Origin: Ranitomeya imitator
Taxonomy: Eukaryota
Assembly: GCF_032444005.1 (NCBI RefSeq)
Contig: NC_091288.1
Span: forward strand, 201,934,001 to 201,998,000
DNA: 64,000 nt
Reading direction: 5' to 3'
Shown here piece after piece: positions 1,064 to 53,282 of the stretch (the first letter of the stretch is position 1; each line of letters begins with the position of its first letter). The position numbers and the translations under genes are program-made. Under the pieces are notes generated by a model that was not told the origin of the DNA, did no database searches, and worked only from the letters and a program-made list of their open reading frames with translations.

Positions 1064-1880
1064 TAGTTCTCAATACCCAGATAGTGGTAATGTTCTGAGC
1101 AGGGACACTCCGCAATCTTCTACACATGATCGTACATTTCCCATCACAGAGGGATCTGCTGGGAAGGGCAGAATTGGTCTTCCCTGAAATGTCTCTTGTA
1201 GGATATGTCCCTGACCAGTATATCGTCTGCACAGTACTGATTGTGACGGGAAAGGGACGATCTGATCGTCTCCAGGTCAGGCACACGGGCACATCACAGC
1301 ATGTGGAGAACACGAATCAGTCTCTATATCTATGAGTGGAAACAGGAGCGAATACTGCACCGCTAACCTGGAAATCTGCAGACTCCTGTGTGGGATGTAA
1401 GAGAGCAATGATCGCTCAACACAAGCAGATTTCCCGATATCGGTCCTGGGAGCACGTGTCATATGAAGACAAAGGACGGAAAAAAGCGGGAACTTTAAAC
1501 TTTTTACCATTGGAAACATTAGCTCCTCCCTCTGCTGATTGGCTGAACACAGGACGGTTAGGGGGGTTTGAATTTCCCGCCGCTTCTAAATGTAATGACG
1601 TCATTTACACTGTAAAAAGAATTCAATTAGGCTCTAGATCAACTCCACCGACCACCACAAATGGCTCCTGTTAACGGAGAAAGGAGAGTAATGAACGAGA
1701 CCCCAGAATGCCGAGATCTGTGCAGCAAGGGGTTAAATAAGTCCCTGAATACACATCAACTCACTGAGCAATGCCCAGATTATTCCTGAGGTTTTCTCAC
1801 CATCTCCCTCGTCATCAGACGCAGAGCCCCGGGCGGTGCGAGCAGACACCTCGGGGAGACGGGAGAGGACACCGGAGCAG

Positions 1881-1965
1881 TGTGGGTGGCTCTTATAGTG
1901 AGGGTGTAGGTGGCTCTTATAGGGAGGGTGTGGGTGGCTCTTATAGGGAGGGTGTGGGTGGCTCT
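1881..1965 (-). repeat. 24-bp tandem repeat after the H2B stem-loop
   Basis: Unit AAGAGCCACCCACACCCTCCCTAT; AAGAGCCACC occurs 4, 3, 4 and 3 times (stem arm included) in the four H2B copies. Confidence 0.92.
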
Positions 1966-1975
1966 TAGAAGAGCC
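1960..1975 (-). terminator. Histone 3' stem-loop (H2B)
   Basis: Minus strand AAA GGCTCT TCTA AGAGCC ACCCA; present in all four H2B copies. Confidence 0.95.
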
Positions 1976-2880: not shown

Positions 2881-5011
2881 GATGTACTAGATTTTCTCGG
2901 CACCACCATCCGCATGTGGGGTGCTGCTGTAATCCCGTTCATTATCCTCATTTTTCCTCTGCACATTCCCACATCCAGCCAAGTGATCGCGGGGTCCAGT
3001 ATACTCATCAGCATTGCCAATACTTCGATATGTAGCAAAGAAGGAGTGGTGTAAAAATTTGGGGGGCATTTTGAGGGCAACCCAAACGTTGTGCCCCACC
3101 AAAAAATGTCCCGGTTGACCCAAAACATTCTGAAAAAAATTACCACACACTCTTATAGTGTTCCTCTACACACCCTGAGAATTTGTGGTCGACAGACCCA
3201 AACCGGGCTTAGCAGTGACCTTGCGCAACACAGACTTCAATGGGCAGGGTCACTTTGGGGAGTCTCTGCTCAGCCCAGTTTGTGGCTATCATCAACCCCA
3301 AATGTTCAGGGTGTGTAGCTCTAGTGGACCAGTGCTGTAAAAATTTAGGGGGCATTTTGAGATGACCCAAAACATATGCCCCTCCCCACCCCCAAACTTC
3401 TGAACAAATTACCCGACACTCTTGAATTGTTCCTCTACACACCCTGAACATTTGGGGTCGATGGGCACAAACTAGGCTGAGCAGTGACCCTGCGCGCGAT
3501 AGGCTTCCATGGGCAGGGCAGCTTTGGGGGGTAACTGCTCAGCAGTGCACAGATTGGGGCTATCGACTTCAAATTTTCATAGTGTGTAGAGGAATAATTC
3601 ATGAGTGTGGGCTATTTTTTTTCTGAATACCTTGCTCTATATACTGTACACACTGCTCTAGATATTGTACACTGCTCTATATACTGTACACACTGCTCTA
3701 TATATTGTATACTGCTCTATATACTGTACACTGATTTACATACTGTACCCTCTCCTGTATATACTGTACACACTGCTACTGTACACTCTGGTCTATATAC
3801 TGTGTACTCTGCTGTATATACTGTACACACTGCTCTATATACTGTACGCTCTGGTCTATAATACTGTACACTGCTGTATATACTGTTCACACTGCTCTAT
3901 ATACTGTACACTGCTCTAAATACTGTACACACTGCTCTATATACTGTATATACTGTATATATACTGTATATATTGCTGTATATATACTGTATATATACTG
4001 TATATATTGCTGTATATACTGTACAATCTGTTGCACAGTCTGTATACACTGCTGTATATACTGCATACTCTGCTCTATATACTGTACACACGGCACTATG
4101 CTATACACTGCTCTATATACTGTACACTCTGGTCTATAAACTGGACACTGCTGTATATACTGTACTCTGCTTTATATACTGTACACACTGTTGTATATAC
4201 TGTAGACTCTCCTCTATTATCTGTGACACTTATTACACTGCTGATCTGGGCTGTGCAGATGTGATGTTGTGCACTATATATACTATATACAGCTGTGTTC
4301 TCTGTGTAGACGCTGGATTTTGTGTCTCCGCTTTTCTCCCAATATTCCCCTTTTGCACAACAGTGGGGGTCACATACATGCATGAATATTTCAGTTTTCT
4401 CCCGAGATGTTCATGTGTTTGGTTGGGGAGTCGCGCTGTGCAGCTGTCGCCTCATCAGAGCTCTTCCCTCCATTACAGGCCGCAGCGGTCACAGCTTCAC
4501 ACTGGGTAAGACACGATATCAGGCAGGTGATTGCAATCAGCCCCCGATATGGATCATCTACTGATGTGGAACACGTGTCCCCCCAATACTCTGCACATAC
4601 GGGGTAGAGTGATATCACAGGTCAGGGAGGTGGCAGTCAGCGGAGGCCGTCGCCTGTGTTACCCTTCTGGGTTCTCAGCAGCTCCAGCTGGTCCCCACAT
4701 CGTACAATCAGCTTCCTGTGCGATAGACACTGGAGTAAAGATCCCTGTGATGGTGACAAGAGCCGGGAATAGGAGGAACGAGCTCCCGCAGCAGATTTAT
4801 CTACCCGGACACACAGTGATGTGCAGATCGGGAGGACGGCGGCGATAATCTCCGCAATTTCTAGGCGTTTCCACTAGTGACGGCTACAAACGGTCGGTGG
4901 AGATGATGGAGAAGGAGAAGCGACGGAGGAATCGCGCTCTGCTGTCCGGTGTTAGCCGGTAAAGGGTTTTTATCCCGGGCAGGGAAGCACAAGGGGAGAG
5001 CGGAGCTTCAC
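2881..5011 (+). repeat. Long inverted repeat, left arm (TE-like composite)
   Basis: Reverse complement of 13447-16141, starting GATGTACTAG. Contains ~270-bp imperfect palindromic subunits and a satellite. Copies at 23574-25704 and 44291-46423. Confidence 0.9.
3625..4205 (+). repeat. Degenerate satellite (TATATACTGTACACACTGCTC)n
   Basis: Visible units of about 19-21 bp; source of the YILYTLL-type ORFs. Confidence 0.9.
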
Positions 5012-5381
5012 TACCTGCCAGCCCTTATGCCGAAGTGATCAGATTCTATTCTGTGTAATCCGCTCATGTAACCAATATTGGCGGAGGCTGCGGGGAGTTA
5101 TAGATTTCATGTCTTATAAAAGCAGCTCAGCGGGTTATCGATTGTGCAGAGGTGTCAGTATGTGCATGTATATATGTGTATGTACATACCCCATACACCC
5201 TTGTATCATTTACCAAATAGTACCGTAACAATGAACAGCATCAGCGGTTCCAGCTCCATAATGCAAACAGGGGGCAGCACAATAAGATGGGGGCAAACAC
5301 CAGTATATGTCAGGACTCGGGAGACTTAATGTTAGTCAGATAGGAGCTCTGCACTTCCGCAGCCATTTAATCTCATTCAAT

Positions 5382-5984
5382 GAGCCACCACCTCCTCCCC
5401 GCAGAGCTGTATGATCAGTGCCACCACCTTCTCCCAACAGAGCTGTATGATCAGTGCCACCACCTCCTCCTCGCAGAGCTGTATGATCAGTGCCACCACC
5501 TCCTCCCCGCAGAGCTGTATGATCAGAGCAACCACCTTCTCCCCACAGAGCTGTATGATCAGTGCCATCACCCACTCCCCGCAGAGCTGTATGATCAGTG
5601 CCACCACCTCCTCGCAGAGCTGTATGATCAGTGCCACCACCTCCTCCCCACGGAACTGTATGATCAGTGCCACCGCCTCCTCCCCGCAGAGCTGTATGAT
5701 CAGTGCCACCACCTCCTCCCCGCAGAGCTGTATGATCAGTGCCACCACCTCCTCCTCCCTGCAGAGCTGTATGATCAGTGCCACCACCTCCTCCTCCCCG
5801 CAGAGCTGTATGATCAGTGCCACCACCTCCTCCTCCCCGCAGAGCTGTATGATCAGTGCCACTACCTCCTCCCCGCAGAGCTGTATGATCAGAGCAACCA
5901 CTTCCTCCCCAGCAGAGCTATATGATCAGTGCCACCACCTTCTCCCCACAGAGCTGTATGATCAGTGCCACCACCTTCTCCCCT
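5382..5984 (+). repeat. 36-bp minisatellite, inverted orphan array (about 16 copies)
   Basis: Same unit on the + strand, starting GAGCCACCACCTCC. Copies at 26075-26677 and 46794-47396. Confidence 0.95.
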
Positions 5985-8254: not shown

Positions 8255-8358
8255 AATGAGCTCGTCTTGAGGGAGGATTTAGTGGCTCTGAAAAGAGCCT
8301 TTGTGTTGTGGTCGGTGCCGGGGCAGATCTAAGCTCTCTCCCCACGGATCCGGCGGGC
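8255..8358 (-). pseudogene. H3: H3 3' remnant (ARRIRGERA*, 3' UTR, stem-loop, HDE region)
   Basis: 8284-8358 is nearly identical to 10178-10252, and looser homology continues about 25 nt past the stem-loop. Copies at +20,693 and +41,412. Confidence 0.9.
8284..8299 (-). terminator. Orphan histone 3' stem-loop (H3 remnant)
   Basis: GGCTCT TTTC AGAGCC following the H3 C-terminal remnant; recurs in units 2 and 3. Confidence 0.9.
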
Positions 8359-8634: not shown

Positions 8635-9145
<511 letters not shown>

Positions 9146-10177
9146 TTATTGTGCTCTTATTTCCCCGCTTCTCTATTCTTCTCATCTCGGCGCCGCTGCT
9201 AGATCTGTTGGTTATTTCGATTTTTTTTCATTGTTATTTATGTTGCTAGTTTCCAGCTTCTGCCAAATGTTAGCTAGTAGAATAAAAAATATATTCTAGG
9301 GACAATAATCTACAGAAAACTCGTGATCCCCGGCAGTCACTCATCATTACACGTGGTGCCGGACTGGCGGCCATTACCGGTCCCTCAGAGCAGGGAGCTG
9401 CATGTAACCAGTCACCCTGCGGCTCCAGCCCTGGAGAAGATGGGAAAAGTCAAATATACGAGAATTGCTTAACGACCCACCCACCACAAATGCGACCATC
9501 GCAGCACACGGGGGAGGGATCTGCTCAGACCAGTGTCAGGCAGAATAGATCACATAAAGGCGTCATCACCGATCTGAGGGACAAATGAGGTTATTAACAG
9601 AAACTAAGCGCAGAGATCTCCGATCCGAACAAAAGAGAACAACCTAAAGCCGCAAGACTGAGGAGGCGGCACTAGGACCCAGCGCGTGAGACAGCAGATT
9701 GTGATCGGTTATGATCCTCAGGAGCGCGAGCAGCAAATGAGCGGGAATTTCAAATCCACCAGCGGATCGGTAAATGACCACAAAACATCAGCATAAAGAA
9801 CCGTTCTCAGGAACCGACCAATCACCGATTACTTTTACTCCATTAACTCAATAGTGACCGCGTTCCTGCAGATCCACCCCATTTACGTCTGCACTGTATA
9901 GGAACCGCACATCCACCACCGCAAACCCGGTTGTGCACTGTACACACTTTACGCGGTCCTTATAACACGTCGGTTTTGTTATAGATGTCGGACACTTTTG
10001 GACTGGGCGAGAATAGAGAATGTGCAGAGCGATAACCAATATCGCTGATCACCTGCAATATCGGAAGCAGCAGCCTCCGTCCATTTAACTGATCGACCGT
10101 GCCTGCGCTTCGTACACTGAGAATACGCGCAGAAAAGGGACTGCTCAGGAATCGGCTCATTTGGGAGAGACTTTGGT

Positions 10178-10193
10178 GGCTCTGAAAAGAGCC
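10178..10193 (-). terminator. Histone 3' stem-loop (H3)
   Basis: GGCTCT TTTC AGAGCC ACCA. Confidence 0.95.
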
Positions 10194-10222
10194 TTTGTGT
10201 TGTGGTCGCAGCCGGGGCAGAT

Positions 10223-10850
<628 letters not shown>

Positions 10851-11039
10851 TTCCGTGATGCGTCTGTCCTCAGATCACTCATTTGCCGCTTGCTGGAGCA
10901 GCTGATGTATTTGCGTTCAAATGTCCCCGTGTATAGCGCTGTACAGTGCAGCTCCCGCAATATCGACAGATCACACAAACCCCCCATCCTGAGACTGCGC
11001 CCAGCATCAGTTATATTACAAACATTAGAAGTCCGAGAA

Positions 11040-12588
11040 CTAATCATACAGCTCTGCGGGGAGGAGGCGGTGGCACTGATCATACAGCTCTGTGGGGAGG
11101 AGGTGGTGGCTCTGATCATACAGCTCTGTGGGGAGAAGGTGGTTGCTCTGATCATACAGCTCTGCGGGGAGGAGGTAGTGGCACTGATAATACAGCTCTG
11201 CGGGGAGGAGGTAGTGGCACTGATCATACAGCTCTGTGGGGAGAAGGTGGTTGCTCTGATCATACAGCTCTGCGAGGAGGAGGTGATGGCACTGATCATA
11301 CAGCTCTGCGGGGAGGAGGTGGTGGCACTGATCATACAGCTCTGCGGGGAGGAGGTGGTGGCTCTGATCATACAGCTCTGTGGGGAGAGGTGGTGGCACT
11401 GATCATACAGCTCTGCTGGGGAGGAGGTGGTTGCTCTGATCATACAGCTCTGCGGGGAGGAGGTAGTGGCACTGATCATACAGCTCTGCGGGGAGGAGGT
11501 AGTGGCTCTGATCATACAGCTCTGCGGGGAGAATGTGATGGCTCTGATCATACAGCTCTGCTGGGGAGGAGGTGGTGGCTCTGATCATACAGCTCTGTGG
11601 GGAGAAGGTGGTTGCTCTGATCATACAGCTCTGCGGGGAGGAGGTAGTGGCACTGATAATACAGCTCTGCGGGGAGGAGGTAGTGGCACTGATCATACAG
11701 CTCTGTGGGGAGAAGGTGGTTGCTCTGATCATACAGCTCTGCGAGGAGGAGGTGATGGCACTGATCATACAGCTCTGCGGGGAGGAGGTGGTGGCACTGA
11801 TCATACAGCTCTGTGGGGAGAAGGTGGTTGCTCTGATCATACAGCTCTGCGGGGAGGAGGTGGTGGCACTGATCATACAGCTCTGCGAGGAGGAGGTGGT
11901 GGCACTGATCATACAGCTCTGCGGGGAGTGGGTGATGGCACTGATCATACAGCTCTGCGGGGAGGAGGTGGTGGCACTGATCATACAGCTCTGCGGGGAG
12001 GAGGTGGTGGCACTGATCATACAGCTCTGCGGGGAGGAGGTAGTGGCTCTGATCATACAGCTCTGCGGGGAGAATGTGATGGCTCTGATCATACAGCTCT
12101 GCTGGGGAGGAGGTGGTGGCTCTGATCATACAGCTCTGTGGGGAGAAGGTGGTTGCTCTGATCATACAGCTCTGCGGGGAGGAGGTAGTGGCACTGATAA
12201 TACAGCTCTGCGGGGAGGAGGTAGTGGCACTGATCATACAGCTCTGCGGGGAGGAGGTGGTGGCACTGATCATACAGCTCTGTGGGGAGAAGGTGGTTGC
12301 TCTGATCATACAGCTCTGCGGGGAGGAGGTGGTGGCACTGATCATACAGCTCTGCGAGGAGGAGGTGGTGGCACTGATCATACAGCTCTGCGGGGAGTGG
12401 GTGATGGCACTGATCATACAGCTCTGCGGGGAGGAGGTGGTGGCACTGATCATACAGCTCTGCGGGGAGGTGGTGGCACTGATCATACAGCCCTGTGGGG
12501 AGGAGGTAGTGGCACTGATCATACAGCTCTGCTGGGAGGAGGTGTTGGCACTGATCATACAGCTCTGCGGGGAGGAGGTGGTGGCTCT
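11040..12588 (-). repeat. 36-bp minisatellite of the H1 3' processing signal (about 43 copies)
   Basis: Minus-strand unit GCCACCACCTCCTCCCCGCAGAGCTGTATGATCAGT; the first copy begins inside the H1 stem-loop 3' arm. Confidence 0.95.
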
Positions 12589-12598
12589 TATAAGAGCC
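12583..12598 (-). terminator. Histone 3' stem-loop (H1)
   Basis: GGCTCT TATA AGAGCC ACCAC, with HDE AGAGCTGTA 16 nt downstream. Confidence 0.93.
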
Positions 12599-12607
12599 TT
12601 TGTGGTA

Positions 12608-13264
12608 TCAGAACAGGGGCTGCAGCTTATTTCTTAGCCGCGGGCTTCTTGGCTTTCGCAGCCTTCTTAACCGACTCTTGGCGGGTTTGGCCGCCTTCTT
12701 AGCCGGACTCTTCGTCACCTTCTTGGGCTTGGGAGCGGCTTTCGGCTTTTTGGGGCTCTTGGCCGCTTTCTTGGCAGCTGCGGGCTTCTTGGCCTTTTTC
12801 GGGCTCTTCTTGGCCGCGGTCGGAGCCTTCTTGGGCTTCTTCGGAGATTTGGCGGCTTTCTTGGCAGCAGCGGGTTTCTTAGGTTTGGCCGCAGCTGCTG
12901 GCTTCTTCTTGGCCACTTTGTCCTTCGTCTCCTGCTTCTTGTTCAGCTTGAAGGACCCGGAGGCGCCGCTGCCCTTCACCTGGAGGAGGGCGCCCTTGGT
13001 GACCAGAGACTTGACGGCCAGCTTCAGGCGGCTGTTGTTCTTCTCTACATCGTATCCTCCGGCAGACAGAGCCTTCTTCAGGGCGGCCAGAGACACCCCG
13101 CTGCGCTCCTTGGAGGCGGACACGGCTTTCACGATCAGCTCGGAGACGCTGGGGCCGGAGGGTTTATTGCTCTTCTTGGCAGCAGATTTCTTCGGCTGCT
13201 TCTTGGATTTGGCGGCCGGTTCTGCGGGAGGGGGAGCGGCGGCTGGCGCGGTCTCTGCCATCAT
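12608..13264 (-). CDS. H1: Linker histone H1 with frameshifted C-terminus (218 aa)
   Basis: [16 protein letters not shown], globular domain [13 protein letters not shown]...[10 protein letters not shown] and a K/A/P-rich tail. A 1-bp deletion near 12670 gives the tail [22 protein letters not shown]. Stem-loop at 12583-12598. Confidence 0.93.
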
Positions 13265-13446: not shown

Positions 13447-16141
13447 GTGAAGCACCGCTCTCTCCTTGTGCTTCCCTGCCCGGGATAAAAGCCCTTTACC
13501 GGCTAACACCGGACAGCAGAGCGCGCTTCCTCCATCGCCTCTCCTTCTCCAACATCTCCACCGGCCATTTGTAGCCGTCACTAGCAGAGATGCCGGGAAA
13601 GAGCGGAGAACAAATCCCGGGATCATCGCCGCCGTCCTCCCGATCTGCACCTCACTGTGTACCGGGGAGATAAATCTGCTGCGGGAGCTCGTTCCTCCTA
13701 TTCCCGGCTCTTGTCACCATCACAGGGATCTTTACTCCAATGTCTATCGTACAGGGAGCTGATTGTACGATGTGGGGACGAGCTGGAGCTGCTGAGAACC
13801 CAGAAGGGTAACACAGGCGACGGCCTCCGCTGACTGCCCCCTCCCTGACCTGTGATATCACTGTACCCCGTATGTGCAGAGGATTGGGGGGACACGTGTT
13901 CCACATCAGTAGATGATCCACATCGGTGGCTGAGTGCAATCACCTGCCTGATATCTTGTCTTAGTGGTGGGAAAGAGCTCTGATGAGGCGACAGCTGCAC
14001 AGTGCGACTCCCCAACCAAACACATGAACATCTCAGGGGAGAAAACTGAAATATTAACGGATGTATATGACCCCCACTATTATGCAAAAGGGGAATATTG
14101 GGAGAAGAGCGGAGACACAAAATCCAGCGTCTACACAGAGAACACAGCTGTATATAGTATATATAGTGCACAGCATCACATCTGCACAGCCCAGATCAGC
14201 AGTGTAATAAGTGCCACTGATAATAGAGGAGAGGGTACAGTATATACAGCAGAGTGTACAGTATATAGAGCAGAGTACACAGTATATAGAGCAGAGTGTA
14301 CAGTATATAGACCAGAGTGTACAGTATACAGAGCAGTGTGTGCAGTATATACAGCAGAGTGTACAGTATATAGAGCAGTGTATAGTATATACAGCAGTGT
14401 ACAGTATATAGAGCAGTGTATAGTATAGTATAGTGCGGTGTGTACAGTATATAGAGCGGTGTGTGCAGTATATACAGCAGAGTACACTGTATGTAGACCA
14501 GAGTGTACAGTATATACAGCAGAGTACACAGTATATAGACCAGAGTGTACAGTATACAGAGCAGTGTGTGCAGTATATGCAGCAGAGTACACAGTATATA
14601 GAGCAGTGTACAGTATATACAGCAGTGTACAGTATTTACAGCAATGTACAGTAAATAGACCAGAGTGTACAGTATATAGAGCAGTGTACAGTAGTGCGGT
14701 GTGTGCAGTATATAGAGCAGAGTATACAGTATATACAGCAGAGTACAGTATATAGAGCAGAGTGCACAGTATAAAGAGCTGTGTGTACAGTATATACAGG
14801 AGAGGGTACAGTACATAGAGCAGTGTGTACAGTATATAGAGCACTGTACACAGTATATACAGCAGTGTGTACAGTATGTAGAGGAGAGTGTAGAGTATGT
14901 ACAGCAGTGTGTACAGTATATAGATCATTGTGTGCATTATATAGAGCAAAGCGTTCAGTATATAGAGCAGTGTGCAGTATAGTGCGGTGTATATAGAGCA
15001 GTGTATACAGTATACTATTATTATTTTTTTATATAGCACCATTGATTCCATGGTGCTGTACATGAGCGGTGACCTCCCAAAGTGTAGAGGAACAATTCAA
15101 GAGTGTGGGGTACTTATTTCAGAATTCGGGGGGGGGGGGGGGGTTAACGGCCCGGGGGGGGGGCATTTTTTTGAGGGGCATTACTTGTGGGCAAGGTCAA
15201 TTTGGGGGGTCACAGCTCAACCCGGTTTTGGGCTATCAACCCCAAATTTTCAGGGTGTGTAGAGTACCCCTAGCGAACCAATAGTGTAAAAAATTGAGGG
15301 TGGCACTTTGAGGGCACCCCAAAACTAATGCCCCCCCACCCCCAAAAAAAAAAAAAAAAAAAAATGCCCCCCTCCCATTAACCTAAAAATTCTGAAAAAA
15401 AAATAGCCCAACTAATGAATTGTTCCTCTACACACTATGAAAATTTGACGTCGATAGCCCCAATCTGGGCTGAGCAGTTACCCCCCAAAGCTGCCCTGCC
15501 CATTGAAGCCTATCGCGCGCAGGGTCACTGCCCAGCCTGGTTTGTGCCTACCGACCCCACATTTTCAGGGTGTGTAGAGGAACAATTCAAGAGTGTCGGG
15601 TAATTTGTTCAGAAGTTTGGGGGTCGGGAAGGGGGGCATATTTTTGGGGTGATCTCAAAATGCCCCCCACATTTTTGCAGCACTGGTCCACTAGAGCTAT
15701 GGGTACGCTACACACCCTGAAAATGTGTGGTTGATAGCCACAAACAGGGCTGAGCAGAGACTCCCCAAAGTGACCCTGCCCATTGAAGTCTATGGTGCGC
15801 AAGGTCACTGCTCAGCCCGATTTGGGTCTGTCGACCACAAATTCTCAGGGTGTGTAGAGGAACACTTTAAGAGTGTGTGGTAATTTTTTTCAGAATGTTT
15901 TGGGTCAACCGGGGCATTTTTTGGTGGGGCACAACGTTTGGGTTGCCCTCAAAAGCCCCCCAAAGTTTTACACCACACCTCCTTTGCTACATATCGAAGT
16001 ATTGGCAATGCTGATGAGTATACTGGACCCCGCGATCACTTGGCTGGATGTGGGAATGTGCAGAGGAAAAATGAGGATAATGAACGGGATTACAGCAGCA
16101 CCCCACATGCGGATGGTGGTGCCGAGAAAATCTAGTACATC
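13447..16141 (-). repeat. Long inverted repeat, right arm (H1 upstream flank)
   Basis: Ends CTAGTACATC; longer than the left arm (extra palindromic subunit, longer satellite). Copies at 34140-36834 and about 54142-56733. Confidence 0.9.
14235..15012 (-). repeat. Degenerate satellite, inverted copy
   Basis: (GAGCAGTGTGTACAGTATATA)n; about 105-110 bp shorter in unit 3. Confidence 0.9.
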
Positions 16142-17419: not shown

Positions 17420-17740
<321 letters not shown>

Positions 17741-17925: not shown

Positions 17926-18049
17926 TCATTGGTCATATTCTGCAATTATCTTCCCAGCTTGTATTTTATGCAATTTCTTTCCCTTGTGACTAAAGATATC
18001 CCACATATTTTCATCACCGTTCCAGATCATCGTGGTTCATACCATCCAC

Positions 18050-18320
18050 AATGTATGATGCCCCCACTTATCCCGCACACAGTATGCTGCCCCCAAAGTT
18101 ATCCTCCACATAGTATGATGCCCCCTACACAGCAAGATAACCACACAGTAGGATGCCCCCACAGTTACTGTTTAAGGGTATGATATCCCCAGTTACTCCG
18201 AAAACAGTATGATGCCCTAAGTTACCCCCCCCCCCCCCCCCCCCAACACACACACACACACACACACACACAGGAAATATGCTGCACCCACAGTTACACC
18301 CTATACAATGTGATACCCCC
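18050..18320 (+). repeat. Degenerate ~30-bp repeat (AGTATGATGCCCCC...) with poly-C and (CA)n
   Basis: GTATGATGCCCC core recurs about 7 times; the (CA)n tract is shorter in unit 3. Confidence 0.75.
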
Positions 18321-20468: not shown

Positions 20469-20930
<462 letters not shown>

Positions 20931-21780: not shown

Positions 21781-22698
21781 TAGTTCTCAATACCCAGATA
21801 GTGGTAATGTTCTGAGCAGGGACACTCCGCAATCTTCTACACATGATCGTACATTTCCCATCACAGAGGGATCTGCTGGGAAGGGCAGAATTGGTCTTCC
21901 CTGAAATGTCTCTTGTAGGATATGTCCCTGACCAGTATATCGTCTGCACAGTACTGATTGTGACGGGAAAGGGACGATCTGATCGTCTCCAGGTCAGGCA
22001 CACGGGCACATCACAGCATGTGGAGAACACGAATCAGTCTCTATATCTATGAGTGGAAACAGGAGCGAATACTGCACCGCTAACCTGGAAATCTGCAGAC
22101 TCCTGTGTGGGATGTAAGAGAGCAATGATCGCTCAACACAAGCAGATTTCCCGATATCGGTCCTGGGAGCACGTGTCATATGAAGACAAAGGACGGAAAA
22201 AAGCGGGAACTTTAAACTTTTTACCATTGGAAACATTAGCTCCTCCCTCTGCTGATTGGCTGAACACAGGACGGTTAGGGGGGTTTGAATTTCCCGCCGC
22301 TTCTAAATGTAATGACGTCATTTACACTGTAAAAAGAATTCAATTAGGCTCTAGATCAACTCCACCGACCACCACAAATGGCTCCTGTTAACGGAGAAAG
22401 GAGAGTAATGAACGAGACCCCAGAATGCCGAGATCTGTGCAGCAAGGGGTTAAATAAGTCCCTGAATACACATCAACTCACTGAGCAATGCCCAGATTAT
22501 TCCTGAGGTTTTCTCACCATCTCCCTCGTCATCAGACGCAGAGCCCCGGGCGGTGCGAGCAGACACCTCGGGGAGACGGGAGAGGACACCGGAGCAGTGT
22601 GGGTGGCTCTTATAGTGAGGGTGTAGGTGGCTCTTATAGGGAGGGTGTGGGTGGCTCTTAGAAGAGCCTTTGGGGTGAGGAGCGGAGCACGGANNNNN

Positions 22699-23175
<477 letters not shown>

Positions 23176-26100
23176 TCAGACCGCCGTGCTATTGGGTGAT
23201 GATGTCATGTGACCAACGGGAACGTCAGACGCTCCGCCCACTGCAGCTGATTGGTGGTTCTCCAACTGATATTTCGCTTTTCAGCACCCTCCATATAGCG
23301 CTGTAAAACACGTATAATGCTGAATACATCTAAATAGTGCTGTGAAGCGCCATATACCGCAGTGCACCCTCATATAGTGCTCTATGTGTTAATGTAGCTC
23401 TGTTTACCCTTCATGTGCTGCAGTATACTCCAATATAGTGCTGCTATTCATCTGTATAGTGCAGAGTGCCCCCATATACTGCAACTTACTGACAAATGAC
23501 TGTGCCACTTCCAGAGCTCGGCCGTCATGGCCCTGCAGGAGGCCAGCGAGGCTTATCTGCTGGGGAGTCTGGGGATGTACTAGATTTTCTCGGCACCACC
23601 ATCCGCATGTGGGGTGCTGCTGTAATCCCGTTCATTATCCTCATTTTTCCTCTGCACATTCCCACATCCAGCCAAGTGATCGCGGGGTCCAGTATACTCA
23701 TCAGCATTGCCAATACTTCGATATGTAGCAAAGAAGGAGTGGTGTAAAAATTTGGGGGGCATTTTGAGGGCAACCCAAACGTTGTGCCCCACCAAAAAAT
23801 GTCCCGGTTGACCCAAAACATTCTGAAAAAAATTACCACACACTCTTATAGTGTTCCTCTACACACCCTGAGAATTTGTGGTCGACAGACCCAAACCGGG
23901 CTTAGCAGTGACCTTGCGCAACACAGACTTCAATGGGCAGGGTCACTTTGGGGAGTCTCTGCTCAGCCCAGTTTGTGGCTATCATCAACCCCAAATGTTC
24001 AGGGTGTGTAGCTCTAGTGGACCAGTGCTGTAAAAATTTAGGGGGCATTTTGAGATGACCCAAAACATATGCCCCTCCCCACCCCCAAACTTCTGAACAA
24101 ATTACCCGACACTCTTGAATTGTTCCTCTACACACCCTGAACATTTGGGGTCGATGGGCACAAACTAGGCTGAGCAGTGACCCTGCGCGCGATAGGCTTC
24201 CATGGGCAGGGCAGCTTTGGGGGGTAACTGCTCAGCAGTGCACAGATTGGGGCTATCGACTTCAAATTTTCATAGTGTGTAGAGGAATAATTCATGAGTG
24301 TGGGCTATTTTTTTTCTGAATACCTTGCTCTATATACTGTACACACTGCTCTAGATATTGTACACTGCTCTATATACTGTACACACTGCTCTATATATTG
24401 TATACTGCTCTATATACTGTACACTGATTTACATACTGTACCCTCTCCTGTATATACTGTACACACTGCTACTGTACACTCTGGTCTATATACTGTGTAC
24501 TCTGCTGTATATACTGTACACACTGCTCTATATACTGTACGCTCTGGTCTATAATACTGTACACTGCTGTATATACTGTTCACACTGCTCTATATACTGT
24601 ACACTGCTCTAAATACTGTACACACTGCTCTATATACTGTATATACTGTATATATACTGTATATATTGCTGTATATATACTGTATATATACTGTATATAT
24701 TGCTGTATATACTGTACAATCTGTTGCACAGTCTGTATACACTGCTGTATATACTGCATACTCTGCTCTATATACTGTACACACGGCACTATGCTATACA
24801 CTGCTCTATATACTGTACACTCTGGTCTATAAACTGGACACTGCTGTATATACTGTACTCTGCTTTATATACTGTACACACTGTTGTATATACTGTAGAC
24901 TCTCCTCTATTATCTGTGACACTTATTACACTGCTGATCTGGGCTGTGCAGATGTGATGTTGTGCACTATATATACTATATACAGCTGTGTTCTCTGTGT
25001 AGACGCTGGATTTTGTGTCTCCGCTTTTCTCCCAATATTCCCCTTTTGCACAACAGTGGGGGTCACATACATGCATGAATATTTCAGTTTTCTCCCGAGA
25101 TGTTCATGTGTTTGGTTGGGGAGTCGCGCTGTGCAGCTGTCGCCTCATCAGAGCTCTTCCCTCCATTACAGGCCGCAGCGGTCACAGCTTCACACTGGGT
25201 AAGACACGATATCAGGCAGGTGATTGCAATCAGCCCCCGATATGGATCATCTACTGATGTGGAACACGTGTCCCCCCAATACTCTGCACATACGGGGTAG
25301 AGTGATATCACAGGTCAGGGAGGTGGCAGTCAGCGGAGGCCGTCGCCTGTGTTACCCTTCTGGGTTCTCAGCAGCTCCAGCTGGTCCCCACATCGTACAA
25401 TCAGCTTCCTGTGCGATAGACACTGGAGTAAAGATCCCTGTGATGGTGACAAGAGCCGGGAATAGGAGGAACGAGCTCCCGCAGCAGATTTATCTACCCG
25501 GACACACAGTGATGTGCAGATCGGGAGGACGGCGGCGATAATCTCCGCAATTTCTAGGCGTTTCCACTAGTGACGGCTACAAACGGTCGGTGGAGATGAT
25601 GGAGAAGGAGAAGCGACGGAGGAATCGCGCTCTGCTGTCCGGTGTTAGCCGGTAAAGGGTTTTTATCCCGGGCAGGGAAGCACAAGGGGAGAGCGGAGCT
25701 TCACTACCTGCCAGCCCTTATGCCGAAGTGATCAGATTCTATTCTGTGTAATCCGCTCATGTAACCAATATTGGCGGAGGCTGCGGGGAGTTATAGATTT
25801 CATGTCTTATAAAAGCAGCTCAGCGGGTTATCGATTGTGCAGAGGTGTCAGTATGTGCATGTATATATGTGTATGTACATACCCCATACACCCTTGTATC
25901 ATTTACCAAATAGTACCGTAACAATGAACAGCATCAGCGGTTCCAGCTCCATAATGCAAACAGGGGGCAGCACAATAAGATGGGGGCAAACACCAGTATA
26001 TGTCAGGACTCGGGAGACTTAATGTTAGTCAGATAGGAGCTCTGCACTTCCGCAGCCATTTAATCTCATTCAATGAGCCACCACCTCCTCCCCGCAGAGC

Positions 26101-31515: not shown

Positions 31516-31732
31516 CTAATCCCGCCCCTGAAGTCCCCGCCTCTTCCGTGATGCGTCTGTCCTCAGATCACTCATTTGCCGCTTGCTGGAGCAGCTGATG
31601 TATTTGCGTTCAAATGTCCCCGTGTATAGCGCTGTACAGTGCAGCTCCCGCAATATCGACAGATCACACAAACCCCCCATCCTGAGACTGCGCCCAGCAT
31701 CAGTTATATTACAAACATTAGAAGTCCGAGAA

Positions 31733-33281
31733 CTAATCATACAGCTCTGCGGGGAGGAGGCGGTGGCACTGATCATACAGCTCTGTGGGGAGGAGGTGGT
31801 GGCTCTGATCATACAGCTCTGTGGGGAGAAGGTGGTTGCTCTGATCATACAGCTCTGCGGGGAGGAGGTAGTGGCACTGATAATACAGCTCTGCGGGGAG
31901 GAGGTAGTGGCACTGATCATACAGCTCTGTGGGGAGAAGGTGGTTGCTCTGATCATACAGCTCTGCGAGGAGGAGGTGATGGCACTGATCATACAGCTCT
32001 GCGGGGAGGAGGTGGTGGCACTGATCATACAGCTCTGCGGGGAGGAGGTGGTGGCTCTGATCATACAGCTCTGTGGGGAGAGGTGGTGGCACTGATCATA
32101 CAGCTCTGCTGGGGAGGAGGTGGTTGCTCTGATCATACAGCTCTGCGGGGAGGAGGTAGTGGCACTGATCATACAGCTCTGCGGGGAGGAGGTAGTGGCT
32201 CTGATCATACAGCTCTGCGGGGAGAATGTGATGGCTCTGATCATACAGCTCTGCTGGGGAGGAGGTGGTGGCTCTGATCATACAGCTCTGTGGGGAGAAG
32301 GTGGTTGCTCTGATCATACAGCTCTGCGGGGAGGAGGTAGTGGCACTGATAATACAGCTCTGCGGGGAGGAGGTAGTGGCACTGATCATACAGCTCTGTG
32401 GGGAGAAGGTGGTTGCTCTGATCATACAGCTCTGCGAGGAGGAGGTGATGGCACTGATCATACAGCTCTGCGGGGAGGAGGTGGTGGCACTGATCATACA
32501 GCTCTGTGGGGAGAAGGTGGTTGCTCTGATCATACAGCTCTGCGGGGAGGAGGTGGTGGCACTGATCATACAGCTCTGCGAGGAGGAGGTGGTGGCACTG
32601 ATCATACAGCTCTGCGGGGAGTGGGTGATGGCACTGATCATACAGCTCTGCGGGGAGGAGGTGGTGGCACTGATCATACAGCTCTGCGGGGAGGAGGTGG
32701 TGGCACTGATCATACAGCTCTGCGGGGAGGAGGTAGTGGCTCTGATCATACAGCTCTGCGGGGAGAATGTGATGGCTCTGATCATACAGCTCTGCTGGGG
32801 AGGAGGTGGTGGCTCTGATCATACAGCTCTGTGGGGAGAAGGTGGTTGCTCTGATCATACAGCTCTGCGGGGAGGAGGTAGTGGCACTGATAATACAGCT
32901 CTGCGGGGAGGAGGTAGTGGCACTGATCATACAGCTCTGCGGGGAGGAGGTGGTGGCACTGATCATACAGCTCTGTGGGGAGAAGGTGGTTGCTCTGATC
33001 ATACAGCTCTGCGGGGAGGAGGTGGTGGCACTGATCATACAGCTCTGCGAGGAGGAGGTGGTGGCACTGATCATACAGCTCTGCGGGGAGTGGGTGATGG
33101 CACTGATCATACAGCTCTGCGGGGAGGAGGTGGTGGCACTGATCATACAGCTCTGCGGGGAGGTGGTGGCACTGATCATACAGCCCTGTGGGGAGGAGGT
33201 AGTGGCACTGATCATACAGCTCTGCTGGGAGGAGGTGTTGGCACTGATCATACAGCTCTGCGGGGAGGAGGTGGTGGCTCT
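31733..33281 (-). repeat. 36-bp minisatellite (about 43 copies)
   Basis: Copy in unit 2. Confidence 0.95.
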
Positions 33282-33300: not shown

Positions 33301-33957
33301 TCAGAACAGGGGCTGCAGCTTATTTCTTAGCCGCGGGCTTCTTGGCTTTCGCAGCCTTCTTAACCGACTCTTGGCGGGTTTGGCCGCCTTCTTAGCCGGA
33401 CTCTTCGTCACCTTCTTGGGCTTGGGAGCGGCTTTCGGCTTTTTGGGGCTCTTGGCCGCTTTCTTGGCAGCTGCGGGCTTCTTGGCCTTTTTCGGGCTCT
33501 TCTTGGCCGCGGTCGGAGCCTTCTTGGGCTTCTTCGGAGATTTGGCGGCTTTCTTGGCAGCAGCGGGTTTCTTAGGTTTGGCCGCAGCTGCTGGCTTCTT
33601 CTTGGCCACTTTGTCCTTCGTCTCCTGCTTCTTGTTCAGCTTGAAGGACCCGGAGGCGCCGCTGCCCTTCACCTGGAGGAGGGCGCCCTTGGTGACCAGA
33701 GACTTGACGGCCAGCTTCAGGCGGCTGTTGTTCTTCTCTACATCGTATCCTCCGGCAGACAGAGCCTTCTTCAGGGCGGCCAGAGACACCCCGCTGCGCT
33801 CCTTGGAGGCGGACACGGCTTTCACGATCAGCTCGGAGACGCTGGGGCCGGAGGGTTTATTGCTCTTCTTGGCAGCAGATTTCTTCGGCTGCTTCTTGGA
33901 TTTGGCGGCCGGTTCTGCGGGAGGGGGAGCGGCGGCTGGCGCGGTCTCTGCCATCAT
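33301..33957 (-). CDS. H1: Linker histone H1 with frameshifted C-terminus
   Basis: Carries the same frameshift as the unit 1 copy. Confidence 0.93.
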
Positions 33958-42473: not shown

Positions 42474-43415
42474 TAGTTCTCAATACCCAGATAGTGGTAA
42501 TGTTCTGAGCAGGGACACTCCGCAATCTTCTACACATGATCGTACATTTCCCATCACAGAGGGATCTGCTGGGAAGGGCAGAATTGGTCTTCCCTGAAAT
42601 GTCTCTTGTAGGATATGTCCCTGACCAGTATATCGTCTGCACAGTACTGATTGTGACGGGAAAGGGACGATCTGATCGTCTCCAGGTCAGGCACACGGGC
42701 ACATCACAGCATGTGGAGAACACGAATCAGTCTCTATATCTATGAGTGGAAACAGGAGCGAATACTGCACCGCTAACCTGGAAATCTGCAGACTCCTGTG
42801 TGGGATGTAAGAGAGCAATGATCGCTCAACACAAGCAGATTTCCCGATATCGGTCCTGGGAGCACGTGTCATATGAAGACAAAGGACGGAAAAAAGCGGG
42901 AACTTTAAACTTTTTACCATTGGAAACATTAGCTCCTCCCTCTGCTGATTGGCTGAACACAGGACGGTTAGGGGGGTTTGAATTTCCCGCCGCTTCTAAA
43001 TGTAATGACGTCATTTACACTGTAAAAAGAATTCAATTAGGCTCTAGATCAACTCCACCGACCACCACAAATGGCTCCTGTTAACGGAGAAAGGAGAGTA
43101 ATGAACGAGACCCCAGAATGCCGAGATCTGTGCAGCAAGGGGTTAAATAAGTCCCTGAATACACATCAACTCACTGAGCAATGCCCAGATTATTCCTGAG
43201 GTTTTCTCACCATCTCCCTCGTCATCAGACGCAGAGCCCCGGGCGGTGCGAGCAGACACCTCGGGGAGACGGGAGAGGACACCGGAGCAGTGTGGGTGGC
43301 TCTTATAGTGAGGGTGTAGGTGGCTCTTATAGGGAGGGTGTGGGTGGCTCTTATAGGGAGGGTGTGGGTGGCTCTTAGAAGAGCCTTTGGGGTGAGGAGC
43401 GGAGCACGGANNNNN

Positions 43416-52234: not shown

Positions 52235-52451
52235 CTAATCCCGCCCCTGAAGTCCCCGCCTCTTCCGTGATGCGTCTGTCCTCAGATCACTCATTTGCCG
52301 CTTGCTGGAGCAGCTGATGTATTTGCGTTCAAATGTCCCCGTGTATAGCGCTGTACAGTGCAGCTCCCGCAATATCGACAGATCACACAAACCCCCCATC
52401 CTGAGACTGCGCCCAGCATCAGTTATATTACAAACATTAGAAGTCCGAGAA

Positions 52452-53282
52452 CTAATCATACAGCTCTGCGGGGAGGAGGCGGTGGCACTGATCATACAGC
52501 TCTGTGGGGAGGAGGTGGTGGCTCTGATCATACAGCTCTGTGGGGAGAAGGTGGTTGCTCTGATCATACAGCTCTGCGGGGAGGAGGTAGTGGCACTGAT
52601 AATACAGCTCTGCGGGGAGGAGGTAGTGGCACTGATCATACAGCTCTGTGGGGAGAAGGTGGTTGCTCTGATCATACAGCTCTGCGAGGAGGAGGTGATG
52701 GCACTGATCATACAGCTCTGCGGGGAGGAGGTGGTGGCACTGATCATACAGCTCTGCGGGGAGGAGGTGGTGGCTCTGATCATACAGCTCTGTGGGGAGA
52801 GGTGGTGGCACTGATCATACAGCTCTGCTGGGGAGGAGGTGGTTGCTCTGATCATACAGCTCTGCGGGGAGGAGGTAGTGGCACTGATCATACAGCTCTG
52901 CGGGGAGGAGGTAGTGGCTCTGATCATACAGCTCTGCGGGGAGAATGTGATGGCTCTGATCATACAGCTCTGCTGGGGAGGAGGTGGTGGCTCTGATCAT
53001 ACAGCTCTGTGGGGAGAAGGTGGTTGCTCTGATCATACAGCTCTGCGGGGAGGAGGTAGTGGCACTGATAATACAGCTCTGCGGGGAGGAGGTGGTGGCA
53101 CTGATCATACAGCCCTGTGGGGAGGAGGTAGTGGCACTGATCATACAGCTCTGCGGGGAGGAGGTGGTGGCACTGATCATACAGCTCTGCGGGGAGTGGG
53201 TGATGGCACTGATCATACAGCTCTGCTGGGAGGAGGTGTTGGCACTGATCATACAGCTCTGCGGGGAGGAGGTGGTGGCTCT
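52452..53282 (-). repeat. 36-bp minisatellite, contracted (about 23 copies)
   Basis: About 830 bp in unit 3 versus about 1550 bp in units 1 and 2. Confidence 0.95.

What the first reader, a model, noticed from the sequence alone, without database searches (positions are those of the whole stretch)
11040..12598. The H1 3' processing signal is amplified into an array of U7-binding sites
Seen: the minisatellite begins inside the 3' arm of the H1 stem-loop. Each 36-bp unit is the stem 3' arm and cleavage region (GCCACCAC) plus AGAGCTGTA, and in the first unit this lies 16 nt after the stem, the normal HDE position. There are about 43 copies in units 1 and 2 and about 23 in unit 3. Known: the vertebrate U7 snRNA 5' end contains UACAGCUCU (recalled), a 9-nt perfect complement of AGAGCUGUA; amphibian oocyte histone loci are transcribed through into flanking repeats and carry U7-rich bodies. 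Inference: H1 pre-mRNA or read-through RNA would carry dozens of U7 sites, acting as a possible U7 sponge, histone-locus-body scaffold or copy-number dial for processing.
Basis: partly seen in the sequence, partly recalled or inferred. Interest (0 to 1): 0.8.

Follow-up and report, generated by a model that had tools for sequence, protein, structure and literature searches.

The report
Minisatellite built from H1 processing signal
In a poison-frog histone gene cluster, a 36-bp piece running from the 3' arm of the H1 mRNA stem-loop through its U7-pairing element has been copied in tandem 23 to 43 times; the structure is real and unusual, but the evidence favours an ordinary unstable minisatellite over a working array of U7-binding sites.

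Summary
A 36-bp tandem array (43, 43 and 23 units in the three cluster copies) starts inside the 3' arm of the H1 stem-loop. Each unit carries AGAGCTGTA; in unit 1 this lies 16 nt after the stem, the normal HDE position. It is a perfect 9-nt complement of the published mouse and human U7 5' ends.

A second, inverted array of the same unit (16 units, 5382-5983) has no stem-loop or H1 gene. The H2B 3' end has an analogous 24-bp array.

The functional reading (U7 sponge, scaffold or dial) has no support here:
- The 9-bp duplex (-14 kcal/mol) is only in the 1st to 5th percentile of random local 45-mers, and pairs with only 4 of the 6 core purines.
- The 9-mer is not significantly more conserved than the rest of the unit.
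- Published work shows that even a 21-bp HDE:U7 duplex holds U7 snRNP poorly without SLBP on an adjacent stem-loop.
- Histone locus bodies are nucleated by NPAT and FLASH, not by U7.

Best reading: a young, copy-number-unstable minisatellite seeded by duplication of the processing signal, with the HDE carried along passively. The species' own U7, transcription of the array, and its distribution in other frogs could not be tested.

The parts
12608..13264 (-). Histone H1 gene, cluster unit 1 (identical copy in unit 2). It has a -1 frameshift 22 codons before the normal TAA (12628-12630), so the ORF ends at a TGA at 12608-12610. The unit 3 copy (53324-53959) is intact, 212 aa.
12583..12598 (-). 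H1 3' stem-loop GGCTCT-TATA-AGAGCC with ACAAA 5' flank. The 3' arm is 12588-12583.
   Evidence: (RF00032, 29.9 bits, E=5e-5, below gathering score 34)
12558..12566 (-). First AGAGCTGTA, 16 nt after the stem. This is the presumptive functional H1 HDE and the best U7 complement of any gene in the cluster.
   Evidence: HDE position compared with mouse H2a-614 in PMC5961079
11039..12587 (-). Array 1: 43 units of 36 bp, consensus TGCCACCACCTCCTCCCCGCAGAGCTGTATGATCAG, 42 with an intact 9-mer. It contains higher-order block duplications and ends at a unit boundary next to unique sequence upstream of H3.
31732..33280 (-). Array 1 in cluster unit 2 (43 units, identical to unit 1).
52451..53281 (-). Array 1 in cluster unit 3 (23 units). 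It shares the two proximal and 17 distal units with the 43-unit version.
5382..5983 (+). Array 2: an orphan, inverted copy of the same repeat (16 units, 14 intact 9-mers). Its first unit is identical to the first unit of array 1, but there is no 5' stem arm, loop or H1 gene. It ends mid-unit. Copies at 26075-26676 and 46794-47395.
4507..5011 (+). Inverted duplicate (91% identity) of the H1 upstream region 13963-13447. It is followed by 370 bp of unrelated sequence (5012-5381) that replaces the proximal H1 promoter, the CDS and the stem-loop up to the loop.
1880..1975 (-). H2B stem-loop plus an analogous 24-bp tandem array (AAGAGCC + 17 nt). There are 3.7 copies in units 1 and 3 and 2.7 in units 2 and 4. 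It also begins in the stem 3' arm.

Best explanation
The array is a young, copy-number-unstable, GC-rich minisatellite. It arose by tandem duplication of the 36 bp running from the third base of the H1 stem-loop's 3' arm to just past the HDE. It was then expanded and homogenised by unequal exchange or replication slippage.

Only the first unit, next to the stem-loop, is likely to act as the H1 histone downstream element. The other 22 to 42 copies of AGAGCTGTA are carried along because they are part of the repeating unit. They are at most weak, SLBP-unassisted U7 sites on the short-lived downstream cleavage product.

Shown: the anatomy, the copy-number variation, the higher-order duplications, the orphan copy, the H2B parallel, and the complementarity to mammalian U7.

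Inferred: the duplication mechanism, the neutrality, and that unit 1 is the working HDE.
For: (1) The array ends exactly at a unit boundary. The duplicated segment is flanked by AG on both sides (TATAAG|AGCC ... ATCAG|TTCT), as expected for a slippage or microhomology duplication.

(2) Copy number is 43/43/23 in adjacent cluster copies that are otherwise 99.8 to 100% identical. Unit-type maps show block duplications (EFGEHE x2, IJHKLM x2, NHIJH x2) and a shared distal 17-unit stretch. This is classic minisatellite turnover.

(3) H2B in the same cluster has an independent array of different period (24 bp) that also starts in the stem 3' arm. Its period equals the 24-nt spacing between the arm AAGAGCC and the HDE-like AAGAGCC in the single-copy H2A flank. 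So the processing signal is itself a direct repeat prone to slippage. That array also varies, 3.7 against 2.7 copies.

(4) An inverted duplicate of the array survives with 14 of 16 intact 9-mers although its stem-loop and H1 gene have been replaced.

(5) There is no significant depletion of variants in the 9-mer: 3 of 18 distinct variants, binomial p=0.31; Fisher p=0.70 on variable sites. For the whole invariant-looking 17-nt block, p=0.08 to 0.11.

(6) The spacers of this cluster hold several other minisatellites (21-bp, 31-bp, 24-bp).

(7) The unit:U7 duplex is -14.0 kcal/mol, against a local background with a 5th percentile of -13.2 and a 1st percentile of -15.4, and -24.1 for a perfect 16-mer.

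(8) An independent assembly (GCA_958301615.1, R. imitator protein model P0004) reads through the stem-loop and about two units. So the junction is not an assembly artefact.
Against: By raw counts the 3' 17 nt of the unit (CAGAGCTGTATGATCAG) are almost invariant. Minor alleles fall at 5 of 731 positions across the 43 units of array 1, whereas the 5' 19 nt carry about 10% minor alleles. This could reflect constraint. However, the invariant block extends 8 nt beyond what pairs with mammalian U7. The variable half is C-rich and CpG-containing. The units are not independent because of block duplications.

AGAGCTGTA is also the strongest U7 complement of any gene in the cluster, and every intact unit exceeds the H4, H2A, H2B and H3 HDEs in predicted duplex energy.

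The mechanism that seeded a 36-bp period rather than the 22-bp arm-to-HDE spacing is not explained by the arm/HDE direct repeat.
Confidence: 0.68

Rival explanations
1. The array is transcribed as part of the H1 downstream or read-through RNA. Its dozens of 9-nt U7 complements act together as a multivalent, low-affinity landing pad. This would raise the local U7 snRNP and cleavage-factor concentration, sequester U7, or set a copy-number-dependent processing or termination efficiency before the H3 promoter.
For: There are 42 of 43 intact perfect 9-nt complements of the U7 5' end, all in the H1-sense orientation. The first sits at the canonical HDE position. The predicted duplex is stronger than for the other histone genes of the cluster. 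No poly(A) signal lies between the H1 stem-loop and H3, so any read-through RNA would span the array. Read-through into satellite repeats occurs on newt lampbrush chromosomes (PMC2114352). Multi-copy U7-complementary motifs do have a function in human LTR12 elements and lincRNAs (PMC11417402). The 3' half of the unit is nearly invariant by raw counts.
Against: - Internal units have no stem-loop. SLBP is needed to hold U7 snRNP even on a 21-bp duplex (PMC5435866).
- A 9-bp duplex without the AAAGAG core gave under 5% cleavage (PMC7026596). The unit pairs with only AGAG of that core.
- HLB assembly does not depend on U7 or the HDE (PMC10730174).
- The downstream cleavage product is degraded 5' to 3' by CPSF73 (PMC7026596).
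- A sponge role was tested and rejected for the much better 15-nt LTR12 motifs.
- Predicted accessibility of the 9-mers in array RNA is low: P(unpaired) is 0.002 against an average of 0.066 for all 9-nt windows.
- There is no significant site-specific conservation.
- The orphan array has the same conservation without a gene.
Confidence: 0.12
2. The array works at the DNA level as a polymerase pause or termination element, or as an insulator between H1 and the downstream H3 promoter. It would act through its strongly strand-asymmetric G-rich template strand (potential G-quadruplexes), independently of U7.
For: The + strand, which is the template for H1-sense transcription, has 600 G against 290 C and 32 two-tetrad G4-type motifs. 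The other strand has none. The array fills the H1-to-H3 intergenic space on the same strand.
Against: This rests on motif counts only. Two-tetrad G4s are weak. Such strand asymmetry is typical of GC-rich minisatellites in general. Copy number halves between adjacent cluster copies with no compensating change. The orphan array 2 sits in a different context.
Confidence: 0.05
3. U7 snRNA pairs with the repeated motif at chromatin or in nascent RNA to modulate NF-Y-dependent promoters nearby, as reported for human LTR12 elements. The targets would be the H3 promoter next to array 1 and the CCAAT/TATA segment next to array 2.
For: The precedent in PMC11417402. CCAAT-containing promoter sequence lies within about 400 bp of both arrays.
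Against: The LTR12 motif is 15 nt with 0 to 2 mismatches. Here only 9 nt pair with mammalian U7. There is no evidence that the 370-bp segment is a promoter. The idea rests entirely on analogy.
Confidence: 0.03
4. The array length, or the array itself, is an assembly artefact of a repetitive region.
For: Units 1 and 2 are 99.995% identical over 18.7 kb, which could reflect collapsed or copied assembly. Minisatellites are hard to assemble.
Against: A protein model from an independent assembly reads through the same stem-loop and about two units. Gene spacings recorded for the source assembly match both array lengths at several places on a 227-Mb contig. Unit 3 differs in array length and in three substitutions or indels within H1.
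Confidence: 0.03

Closest known systems
Canonical histone downstream element (HDE), e.g. mouse H2a-614
   Same: It lies 3' of a histone stem-loop and is complementary to the U7 5' end. In unit 1 the match begins 17 nt after the stem; in H2a-614 the purine core also begins 17 nt after the stem (PMC5961079). It shares AGAGCUGU with the improved mouse HDE.
   Different: Only AGAG of the AAAGAG purine core is present. The pairing is shifted toward CUGUA. Above all, 42 further copies exist with no stem-loop upstream.
HDE-like motifs in human LTR12 elements and LTR12-derived lincRNAs (PMC11417402)
   Same: These are multi-copy U7-complementary motifs embedded in repeated DNA outside the normal stem-loop context.
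   Different: The LTR12 motif is 15 nt, often perfectly complementary, dispersed by retrotransposition, and acts on transcription with NF-Y. Here the match is 9 nt, the copies are tandem, and they derive directly from a histone gene's own 3' signal. A sponge role was tested and rejected in that system.
GC-rich hypervariable minisatellites
   Same: A unit of 10 to 100 bp, strong purine/pyrimidine strand asymmetry, block duplications, copy-number differences between near-identical neighbours, and variation concentrated toward one end.
   Different: The unit is recognisably a piece of a cis-acting RNA-processing signal and starts inside a conserved RNA hairpin. A second histone gene in the same cluster shows the same phenomenon.
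Satellite repeats flanking newt histone clusters, transcribed by read-through on lampbrush chromosomes
   Same: These are tandem repeats next to amphibian histone genes that can be transcribed when 3' end formation fails (PMC2114352 abstract; the link to histone clusters specifically is recalled from Diaz et al. 1981 and was not checked).
   Different: Those satellites are hundreds of bp long, unrelated to the processing signal, and separate whole clusters. Here the repeat is 36 bp, is derived from the signal, and lies between two genes inside the cluster.

Membership tests
Histone 3' UTR stem-loop (Rfam RF00032), for the hairpin at 12583-12598 | 6-bp stem starting with GG, 4-nt loop with U at positions 1 and 3, A-rich 5' flank, ACC-type 3' flank, located just 3' of a replication-dependent histone CDS | tested here: met
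   GGCTCT-TATA-AGAGCC with ACAAA and ACCAC flanks, 29 nt after the normal H1 stop.
Histone 3' UTR stem-loop (Rfam RF00032), for the hairpin at 12583-12598 | Score at or above the curated gathering threshold (34 bits) | tested here: not met
   29.9 bits, E=5e-5. The H3, H2A and H2B hairpins of this cluster also fall just below threshold (32.7 to 33.5).
Histone downstream element (U7-binding site), unit 1 | Located about 10 to 17 nt 3' of the cleavage region of a histone stem-loop | tested here: met
   The 9-mer starts 16 nt after the stem. Other genes of the cluster have their U7-like cores after 15 to 17 nt. Mouse H2a-614 has 16 nt before its core.
Histone downstream element (U7-binding site), unit 1 | Purine core AAAGAG complementary to the conserved CUCUUU of U7 | tested here: inconclusive
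   Only AGAG is present, preceded by CGC. It is compensated by CUGUA, giving 9 contiguous pairs and -15.1 kcal/mol with the mouse U7 5' end.
Histone downstream element (U7-binding site), unit 1 | Pairs with the U7 snRNA of the same species and is required for cleavage | not testable with these tools
   There is no U7 gene in the window. Frog assemblies could not be read. No frog U7 sequence is available as text in the papers held.
Histone downstream element (U7-binding site), units 2 to 43 and array 2 | Adjacent upstream stem-loop that binds SLBP and stabilises U7 snRNP | tested here: not met
   The only GGCTCT 5' arm is at 12598-12593. Internal units and array 2 have none. The requirement itself comes from PMC5435866.
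Minisatellite | Head-to-tail units of 10 to 100 bp, many copies, copy-number variation between alleles or paralogous copies, internal variant-unit structure | tested here: met
   36 bp; 43/43/23 and 16 copies; 27 unit types with block duplications.
LTR12-type HDE-like motif (PMC11417402) | 15-nt motif with at most 2 mismatches to nucleotides 2 to 16 of U7 | tested here: not met
   Only 9 contiguous complementary nucleotides. The flanking unit sequence does not extend the duplex with mammalian U7.
Competing-RNA 'sponge' | Stable, abundant transcript carrying many accessible sites in excess of the small RNA | not tested
   No expression data were available. Predicted accessibility of the sites is low. 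The downstream cleavage product is normally degraded (PMC7026596).

The most novel reading that the evidence does not exclude
The amplified HDE units form a multivalent, low-affinity U7 snRNP landing pad on nascent RNA downstream of H1. On the orphan array they would do so on a stem-loop-less non-coding transcript. The pad would tune local U7 and cleavage-factor concentration, or promote U7/CPSF73-dependent termination before the H3 promoter, with unit number as a heritable, fast-evolving dial. It would be most relevant in oocytes, where histone loci are heavily transcribed.
Probability: 0.1. Interest if true: 0.75.

Novelty: new variant of a known kind. Interest (0 to 1): 0.35.

Why it matters
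If the neutral reading is right, the locus is still a clean natural example of how a cis-acting RNA signal can seed a minisatellite. The stem 3' arm (A)AGAGCC and the HDE core (A)AGAGCY are near-identical, because both complement a GCUCUU-type sequence. This makes every histone 3' end a short direct repeat. The H2B array, whose 24-bp period equals the arm-to-HDE spacing of H2A, shows that repeat being used.

The locus also offers a ready-made allelic series: 0 stem-loop with 16 units, and 1 stem-loop with 23 or 43 units. This could be used to ask experimentally whether extra HDEs without SLBP recruit U7 snRNP or affect termination. Published in vitro work addresses this only with single sites.

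If the functional reading were right, it would be the first case of copy-number-encoded control of U7-dependent processing.

Tried and rejected
- Fetching orthologous H1 loci from R. variabilis, R. imitator, P. terribilis and Anomaloglossus assemblies: gene tables were returned but no DNA, because the files were too large. Only H1-to-H3 spacing could be used, and that is indirect.
- Surveying the repeat through its periodic ORFs: the minus-strand ORF gave no significant hit. The plus-strand ORF hit only unrelated glycine-rich repeat proteins at 20 to 55% identity. Neither result says anything about the array.
- Exact-pattern scan of metagenome contigs for the unit: no match.
- Finding a frog U7 sequence: there is none in the window. 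Wu & Gall 1993 is not held. The U7 survey gives its frog alignment only as a figure. The text search found only mammalian sequences. Mammalian U7 was used as a proxy.
- Site-specific selection on the 9-mer: not significant.
- The idea that the 370 bp before array 2 comes from elsewhere in the cluster: no match beyond 13 nt.
- Literature search for a prior description of a stem-loop- or HDE-derived minisatellite, or of Ranitomeya histone repeats: nothing found.
Full report
CONTEXT

The window holds three full copies and one partial copy of a 20,693-bp histone gene cluster unit. Copies 1 and 2 are 99.995% identical. Copy 3 is 99.78% identical and differs mainly by a 720-bp shorter array. In unit 1 all genes are on the minus strand:
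- H4 (8635-8946)
- H3 (10223-10633)
- H1 (12608-13264)
- a second H4 (17420-17731)
- H2A (20469-20858)

The H1 protein is closest to dendrobatid poison-frog H1s: Ranitomeya variabilis 98%, then R. imitator and Phyllobates terribilis. The exact proteins are recorded on a 227-Mb contig of assembly GCA_032444005.1. From memory this is an R. imitator assembly; I did not verify that.

THE OBSERVATION

Tandem Repeats Finder reports a 36-bp array at 11039-12585 (43.0 copies, 90% matches, no indels). The same array is at 31732-33278 (43.0 copies), and a 23.0-copy version is at 52451-53279.

On the H1-sense strand the junction reads CACAAA GGCTCT TATA AGAGCC ACCACCTCCTCCCCGC AGAGCTGTA TGATCAG, followed by TGCC... 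and so on. The stem-loop occupies 12598-12583. Repetition starts within its 3' arm. AGAGCTGTA (12566-12558) begins 16 nt after the stem.

Cutting the array into units gives 43 units, 42 with an intact 9-mer. The three copies have 42, 42 and 22 intact 9-mers, all in the H1-sense orientation. Outside the arrays the 9-mer occurs once per cluster unit.

IS THE 9-MER AN HDE?

Mouse and human U7 as printed in PMC7026596 begin AAGUGUUACAGCUCUUUUAG and CAGUGUUACAGCUCUUUUAG. So UACAGCUCU, the exact complement of AGAGCUGUA, is there.

The other genes of this cluster have weaker U7-like cores at the same offset: H4 AGAGGCTG after 15 nt, H2A AAGAGCCG after 17 nt, H3 ATGAGCCG after about 19 nt. The mouse H2a-614 substrate has its purine core after 16 nt (PMC5961079). 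The first 9-mer is thus in the canonical HDE position.

With the mouse U7 5' end, RNAduplex gives:
- -15.1 kcal/mol for the H1 flank and -14.0 for a repeat unit
- -12.8 for H2B, -12.1 for H4, -11.8 for H2A and -6.8 for H3
- random 45-mers from the same cluster: mean -8.6, 5th percentile -13.2, 1st percentile -15.4
- a perfect 16-mer: -24.1

So the site is a credible but modest HDE. It pairs with only AGAG of the AAAGAG core, which is described as the essential part (PMC11417402; PMC7026596).

First, the same 36-bp unit forms a second array on the opposite strand at 5382-5983 (16 units, 14 intact 9-mers), repeated in each cluster copy. It lies in an inverted duplication:
- 2881-5011 (+) matches 16141-13447 (-). 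This includes a 21-bp minisatellite and the distal H1 upstream region at 91% identity.
- After 5011 the homology stops. 370 bp of unrelated sequence follows, containing CCAAT and TATAAAAG.
- Homology resumes exactly at GAGCC, the last five bases of the stem's 3' arm.

The first unit of array 2 is identical to the first unit of array 1. Array 2 is therefore an orphan HDE array: it descends from the H1 3' end but has lost the proximal promoter, the coding region, the 5' arm and the loop. It is as well preserved as array 1.

Second, the H2B 3' end carries its own array: AAGAGCC plus 17 nt, period 24 bp. There are 3.7 copies in units 1 and 3 and 2.7 in units 2 and 4, again starting in the stem's 3' arm. 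In the single-copy H2A flank, the arm AAGAGCC and the HDE-like AAGAGCC are exactly 24 nt apart, and the spacer is 12/17 identical to the H2B unit. The H2B array is what slippage between those two copies of AAGAGCC would produce.

This works because the stem 3' arm and the HDE core both complement a GCUCUU-type sequence (the stem 5' arm and the U7 5' end respectively). Every histone 3' signal therefore contains a short direct repeat.

ARRAY DYNAMICS

Assigning a letter to each distinct unit gives:
- 43-unit array: ABCDEFGEHEIJHKLMEEFGEHENHIJHKLMJOPAENHIJHQR
- 23-unit array: ABFECSJHKLMJOPAENHIJHQR

Blocks of 5 to 6 units are duplicated. The distal 17 units and the proximal 2 are shared. The differences lie toward the H1-proximal end.

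Array 1 ends exactly at a unit boundary against unique sequence, and AG flanks both ends of the founding segment. This is the behaviour of an ordinary minisatellite evolving by unequal exchange or slippage.

In the source assembly the H1-to-H3 spacing recorded for other copies (1975 and 1276 bp) matches the two array lengths seen here. The spacing is 883 bp in R. variabilis and 1042 bp in P. terribilis, against about 448 bp of non-array sequence here. This is compatible with shorter arrays there, but it is only a proxy.

A protein model from an independent R. imitator assembly (P0004) lost its stop codon. It continues ...KLQPLFCYHKGSYKSHHLLPAELYDQCPPPPPRRAV, which is the translation of the 3' UTR, the stem-loop and about two units in the frames seen in the window. 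So the junction is reproducible in independent data.

TEST FOR SELECTION ON THE U7 SITE

By raw counts the 3' 17 nt of the unit (CAGAGCTGTATGATCAG) are almost invariant, and the 5' 19 nt carry nearly all the variation. But the units are not independent.

Counting distinct variants:
- 13 fall in positions 1-19 and 5 in positions 20-36 (binomial p=0.08)
- 3 of 18 fall in the 9-mer (p=0.31)
- on variable sites, Fisher p=0.70 for the 9-mer and p=0.11 for the block

The variable half is C-rich and contains the only CpG. The invariant block extends 8 nt beyond anything that pairs with mammalian U7. There is thus a hint of rate heterogeneity but no evidence of constraint specific to the U7 complement.

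WOULD INTERNAL UNITS BIND U7?

They have no stem-loop. The only GGCTCT arm is the one at 12598.

Published biochemistry says:
- SLBP on the stem-loop is needed to hold U7 snRNP. [quoted passage not shown]
- A substrate retaining 9 uninterrupted base pairs but lacking the AAAGAG core gave under 5% cleavage despite a normal stem-loop (PMC7026596).
- After cleavage, the downstream product is degraded 5' to 3' by CPSF73 (same paper).
- HLBs are nucleated by NPAT/Mxc and FLASH. U7 snRNP is a resident that is not required for their formation (PMC10730174).
- For the much stronger 15-nt U7-complementary motifs of human LTR12 elements and lincRNAs, a sponge role was tested and rejected. The function found was transcriptional (PMC11417402).

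In a local folding model of the read-through RNA, the 9-mers are predicted to be unpaired with probability 0.002, against 0.066 for average 9-nt windows. The natural first site scores equally low, so this measure is weak evidence.

VERDICT

The structure is real and, as far as the searched literature shows, undescribed. A minisatellite has been built from the distal half of a histone 3' processing signal. A sibling array is at H2B, and an orphan inverted copy exists.

The most likely account (about two-thirds confidence) is mutational. A tandem duplication was seeded at the hairpin/HDE region and then expanded. Only unit 1 serves as the H1 HDE, and the rest are passengers.

The species' U7, transcription of the array and its phylogenetic depth could not be examined. 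But those proposals are disfavoured by what is known about U7 snRNP recruitment, and I give them about 10 to 12%.

Minor alternatives have only motif-level support: a G-rich template-strand pause or insulator element (32 G4-type motifs on one strand and none on the other), or LTR12-like U7/NF-Y regulation.

Read-through transcription into satellite repeats on newt lampbrush chromosomes is supported by the abstract of PMC2114352. That paper also cites Gall et al. 1981, which places histone genes at the sphere loci. U7 in Xenopus germinal-vesicle bodies is Wu & Gall 1993, cited in PMC5054213 but not readable here. None of this concerns dendrobatids directly.

Noticed in passing
window 1880-1975 (-); also 22597-22660, 43290-43377, 63187-63250: The H2B 3' end has a 24-bp tandem array (AAGAGCC + ACCCACACCCTCCCTAT) that starts in the stem-loop's 3' arm. 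There are 3.7 copies in cluster units 1 and 3 and 2.7 in units 2 and 4. The period equals the spacing between the arm and the HDE-like AAGAGCC in the single-copy H2A flank (20439 downward).
   Followed up: partly
window 12608-12680 (-), 33301-33373 (-) versus 53324-53395 (-): H1 in cluster units 1 and 2 has a one-base deletion (plus a T/C change) after ...AAKPAKS. This replaces the last 22 residues with an Arg-rich tail and moves the stop to a TGA 9 nt before the stem (4 nt before its ACAAA flank). The unit 3 H1 is intact (212 aa) and also has K-to-R at one globular-domain position. The source assembly holds at least 4 frameshifted and 3 intact copies.
   Followed up: partly
window 8271-8358 (-): Orphan histone stem-loop downstream of H4. 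It is a 90-bp fragment, 94% identical to the last codons, 3' UTR and stem-loop of the H3 gene at 10163-10252, with no H3 coding region attached.
   Followed up: partly
window 2881-5011 (+) versus 16141-13447 (-): A large inverted duplication inside each cluster unit. It carries related 21-bp minisatellites (3633-4208 and 14223-14981) and the distal H1 upstream region. The two 36-bp arrays form its inner ends, about 5 kb apart, and bracket H4 and H3.
   Followed up: partly
window 5012-5381 (+): A 370-bp segment with no match elsewhere in the cluster replaces the proximal H1 promoter, CDS and stem-loop in front of the orphan array. It contains AACCAATATTGG and TATAAAAG, which could act as a promoter driving transcription into array 2.
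   Followed up: no
window 3259-3491 (+): A long, nearly perfect hairpin (weak hit to a plant miRNA family, 47 bits against a gathering score of 230). It is probably an inverted-repeat (MITE-like) element rather than a miRNA.
   Followed up: no
window 11039-12585 (+ strand): Strong strand asymmetry of the array (G 600 against C 290 on the + strand). There are 32 two-tetrad G-quadruplex-type motifs on the strand that templates H1-sense transcription and none on the other. No AATAAA or ATTAAA lies on the H1-sense strand between the stem-loop and H3.
   Followed up: partly
window 18046-18125, 18246-18272 and copies: Further small tandem repeats in the spacers (a 31-bp repeat with 2.7 copies, and (AC)13). 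The cluster spacers are generally rich in tandem repeats.
   Followed up: no
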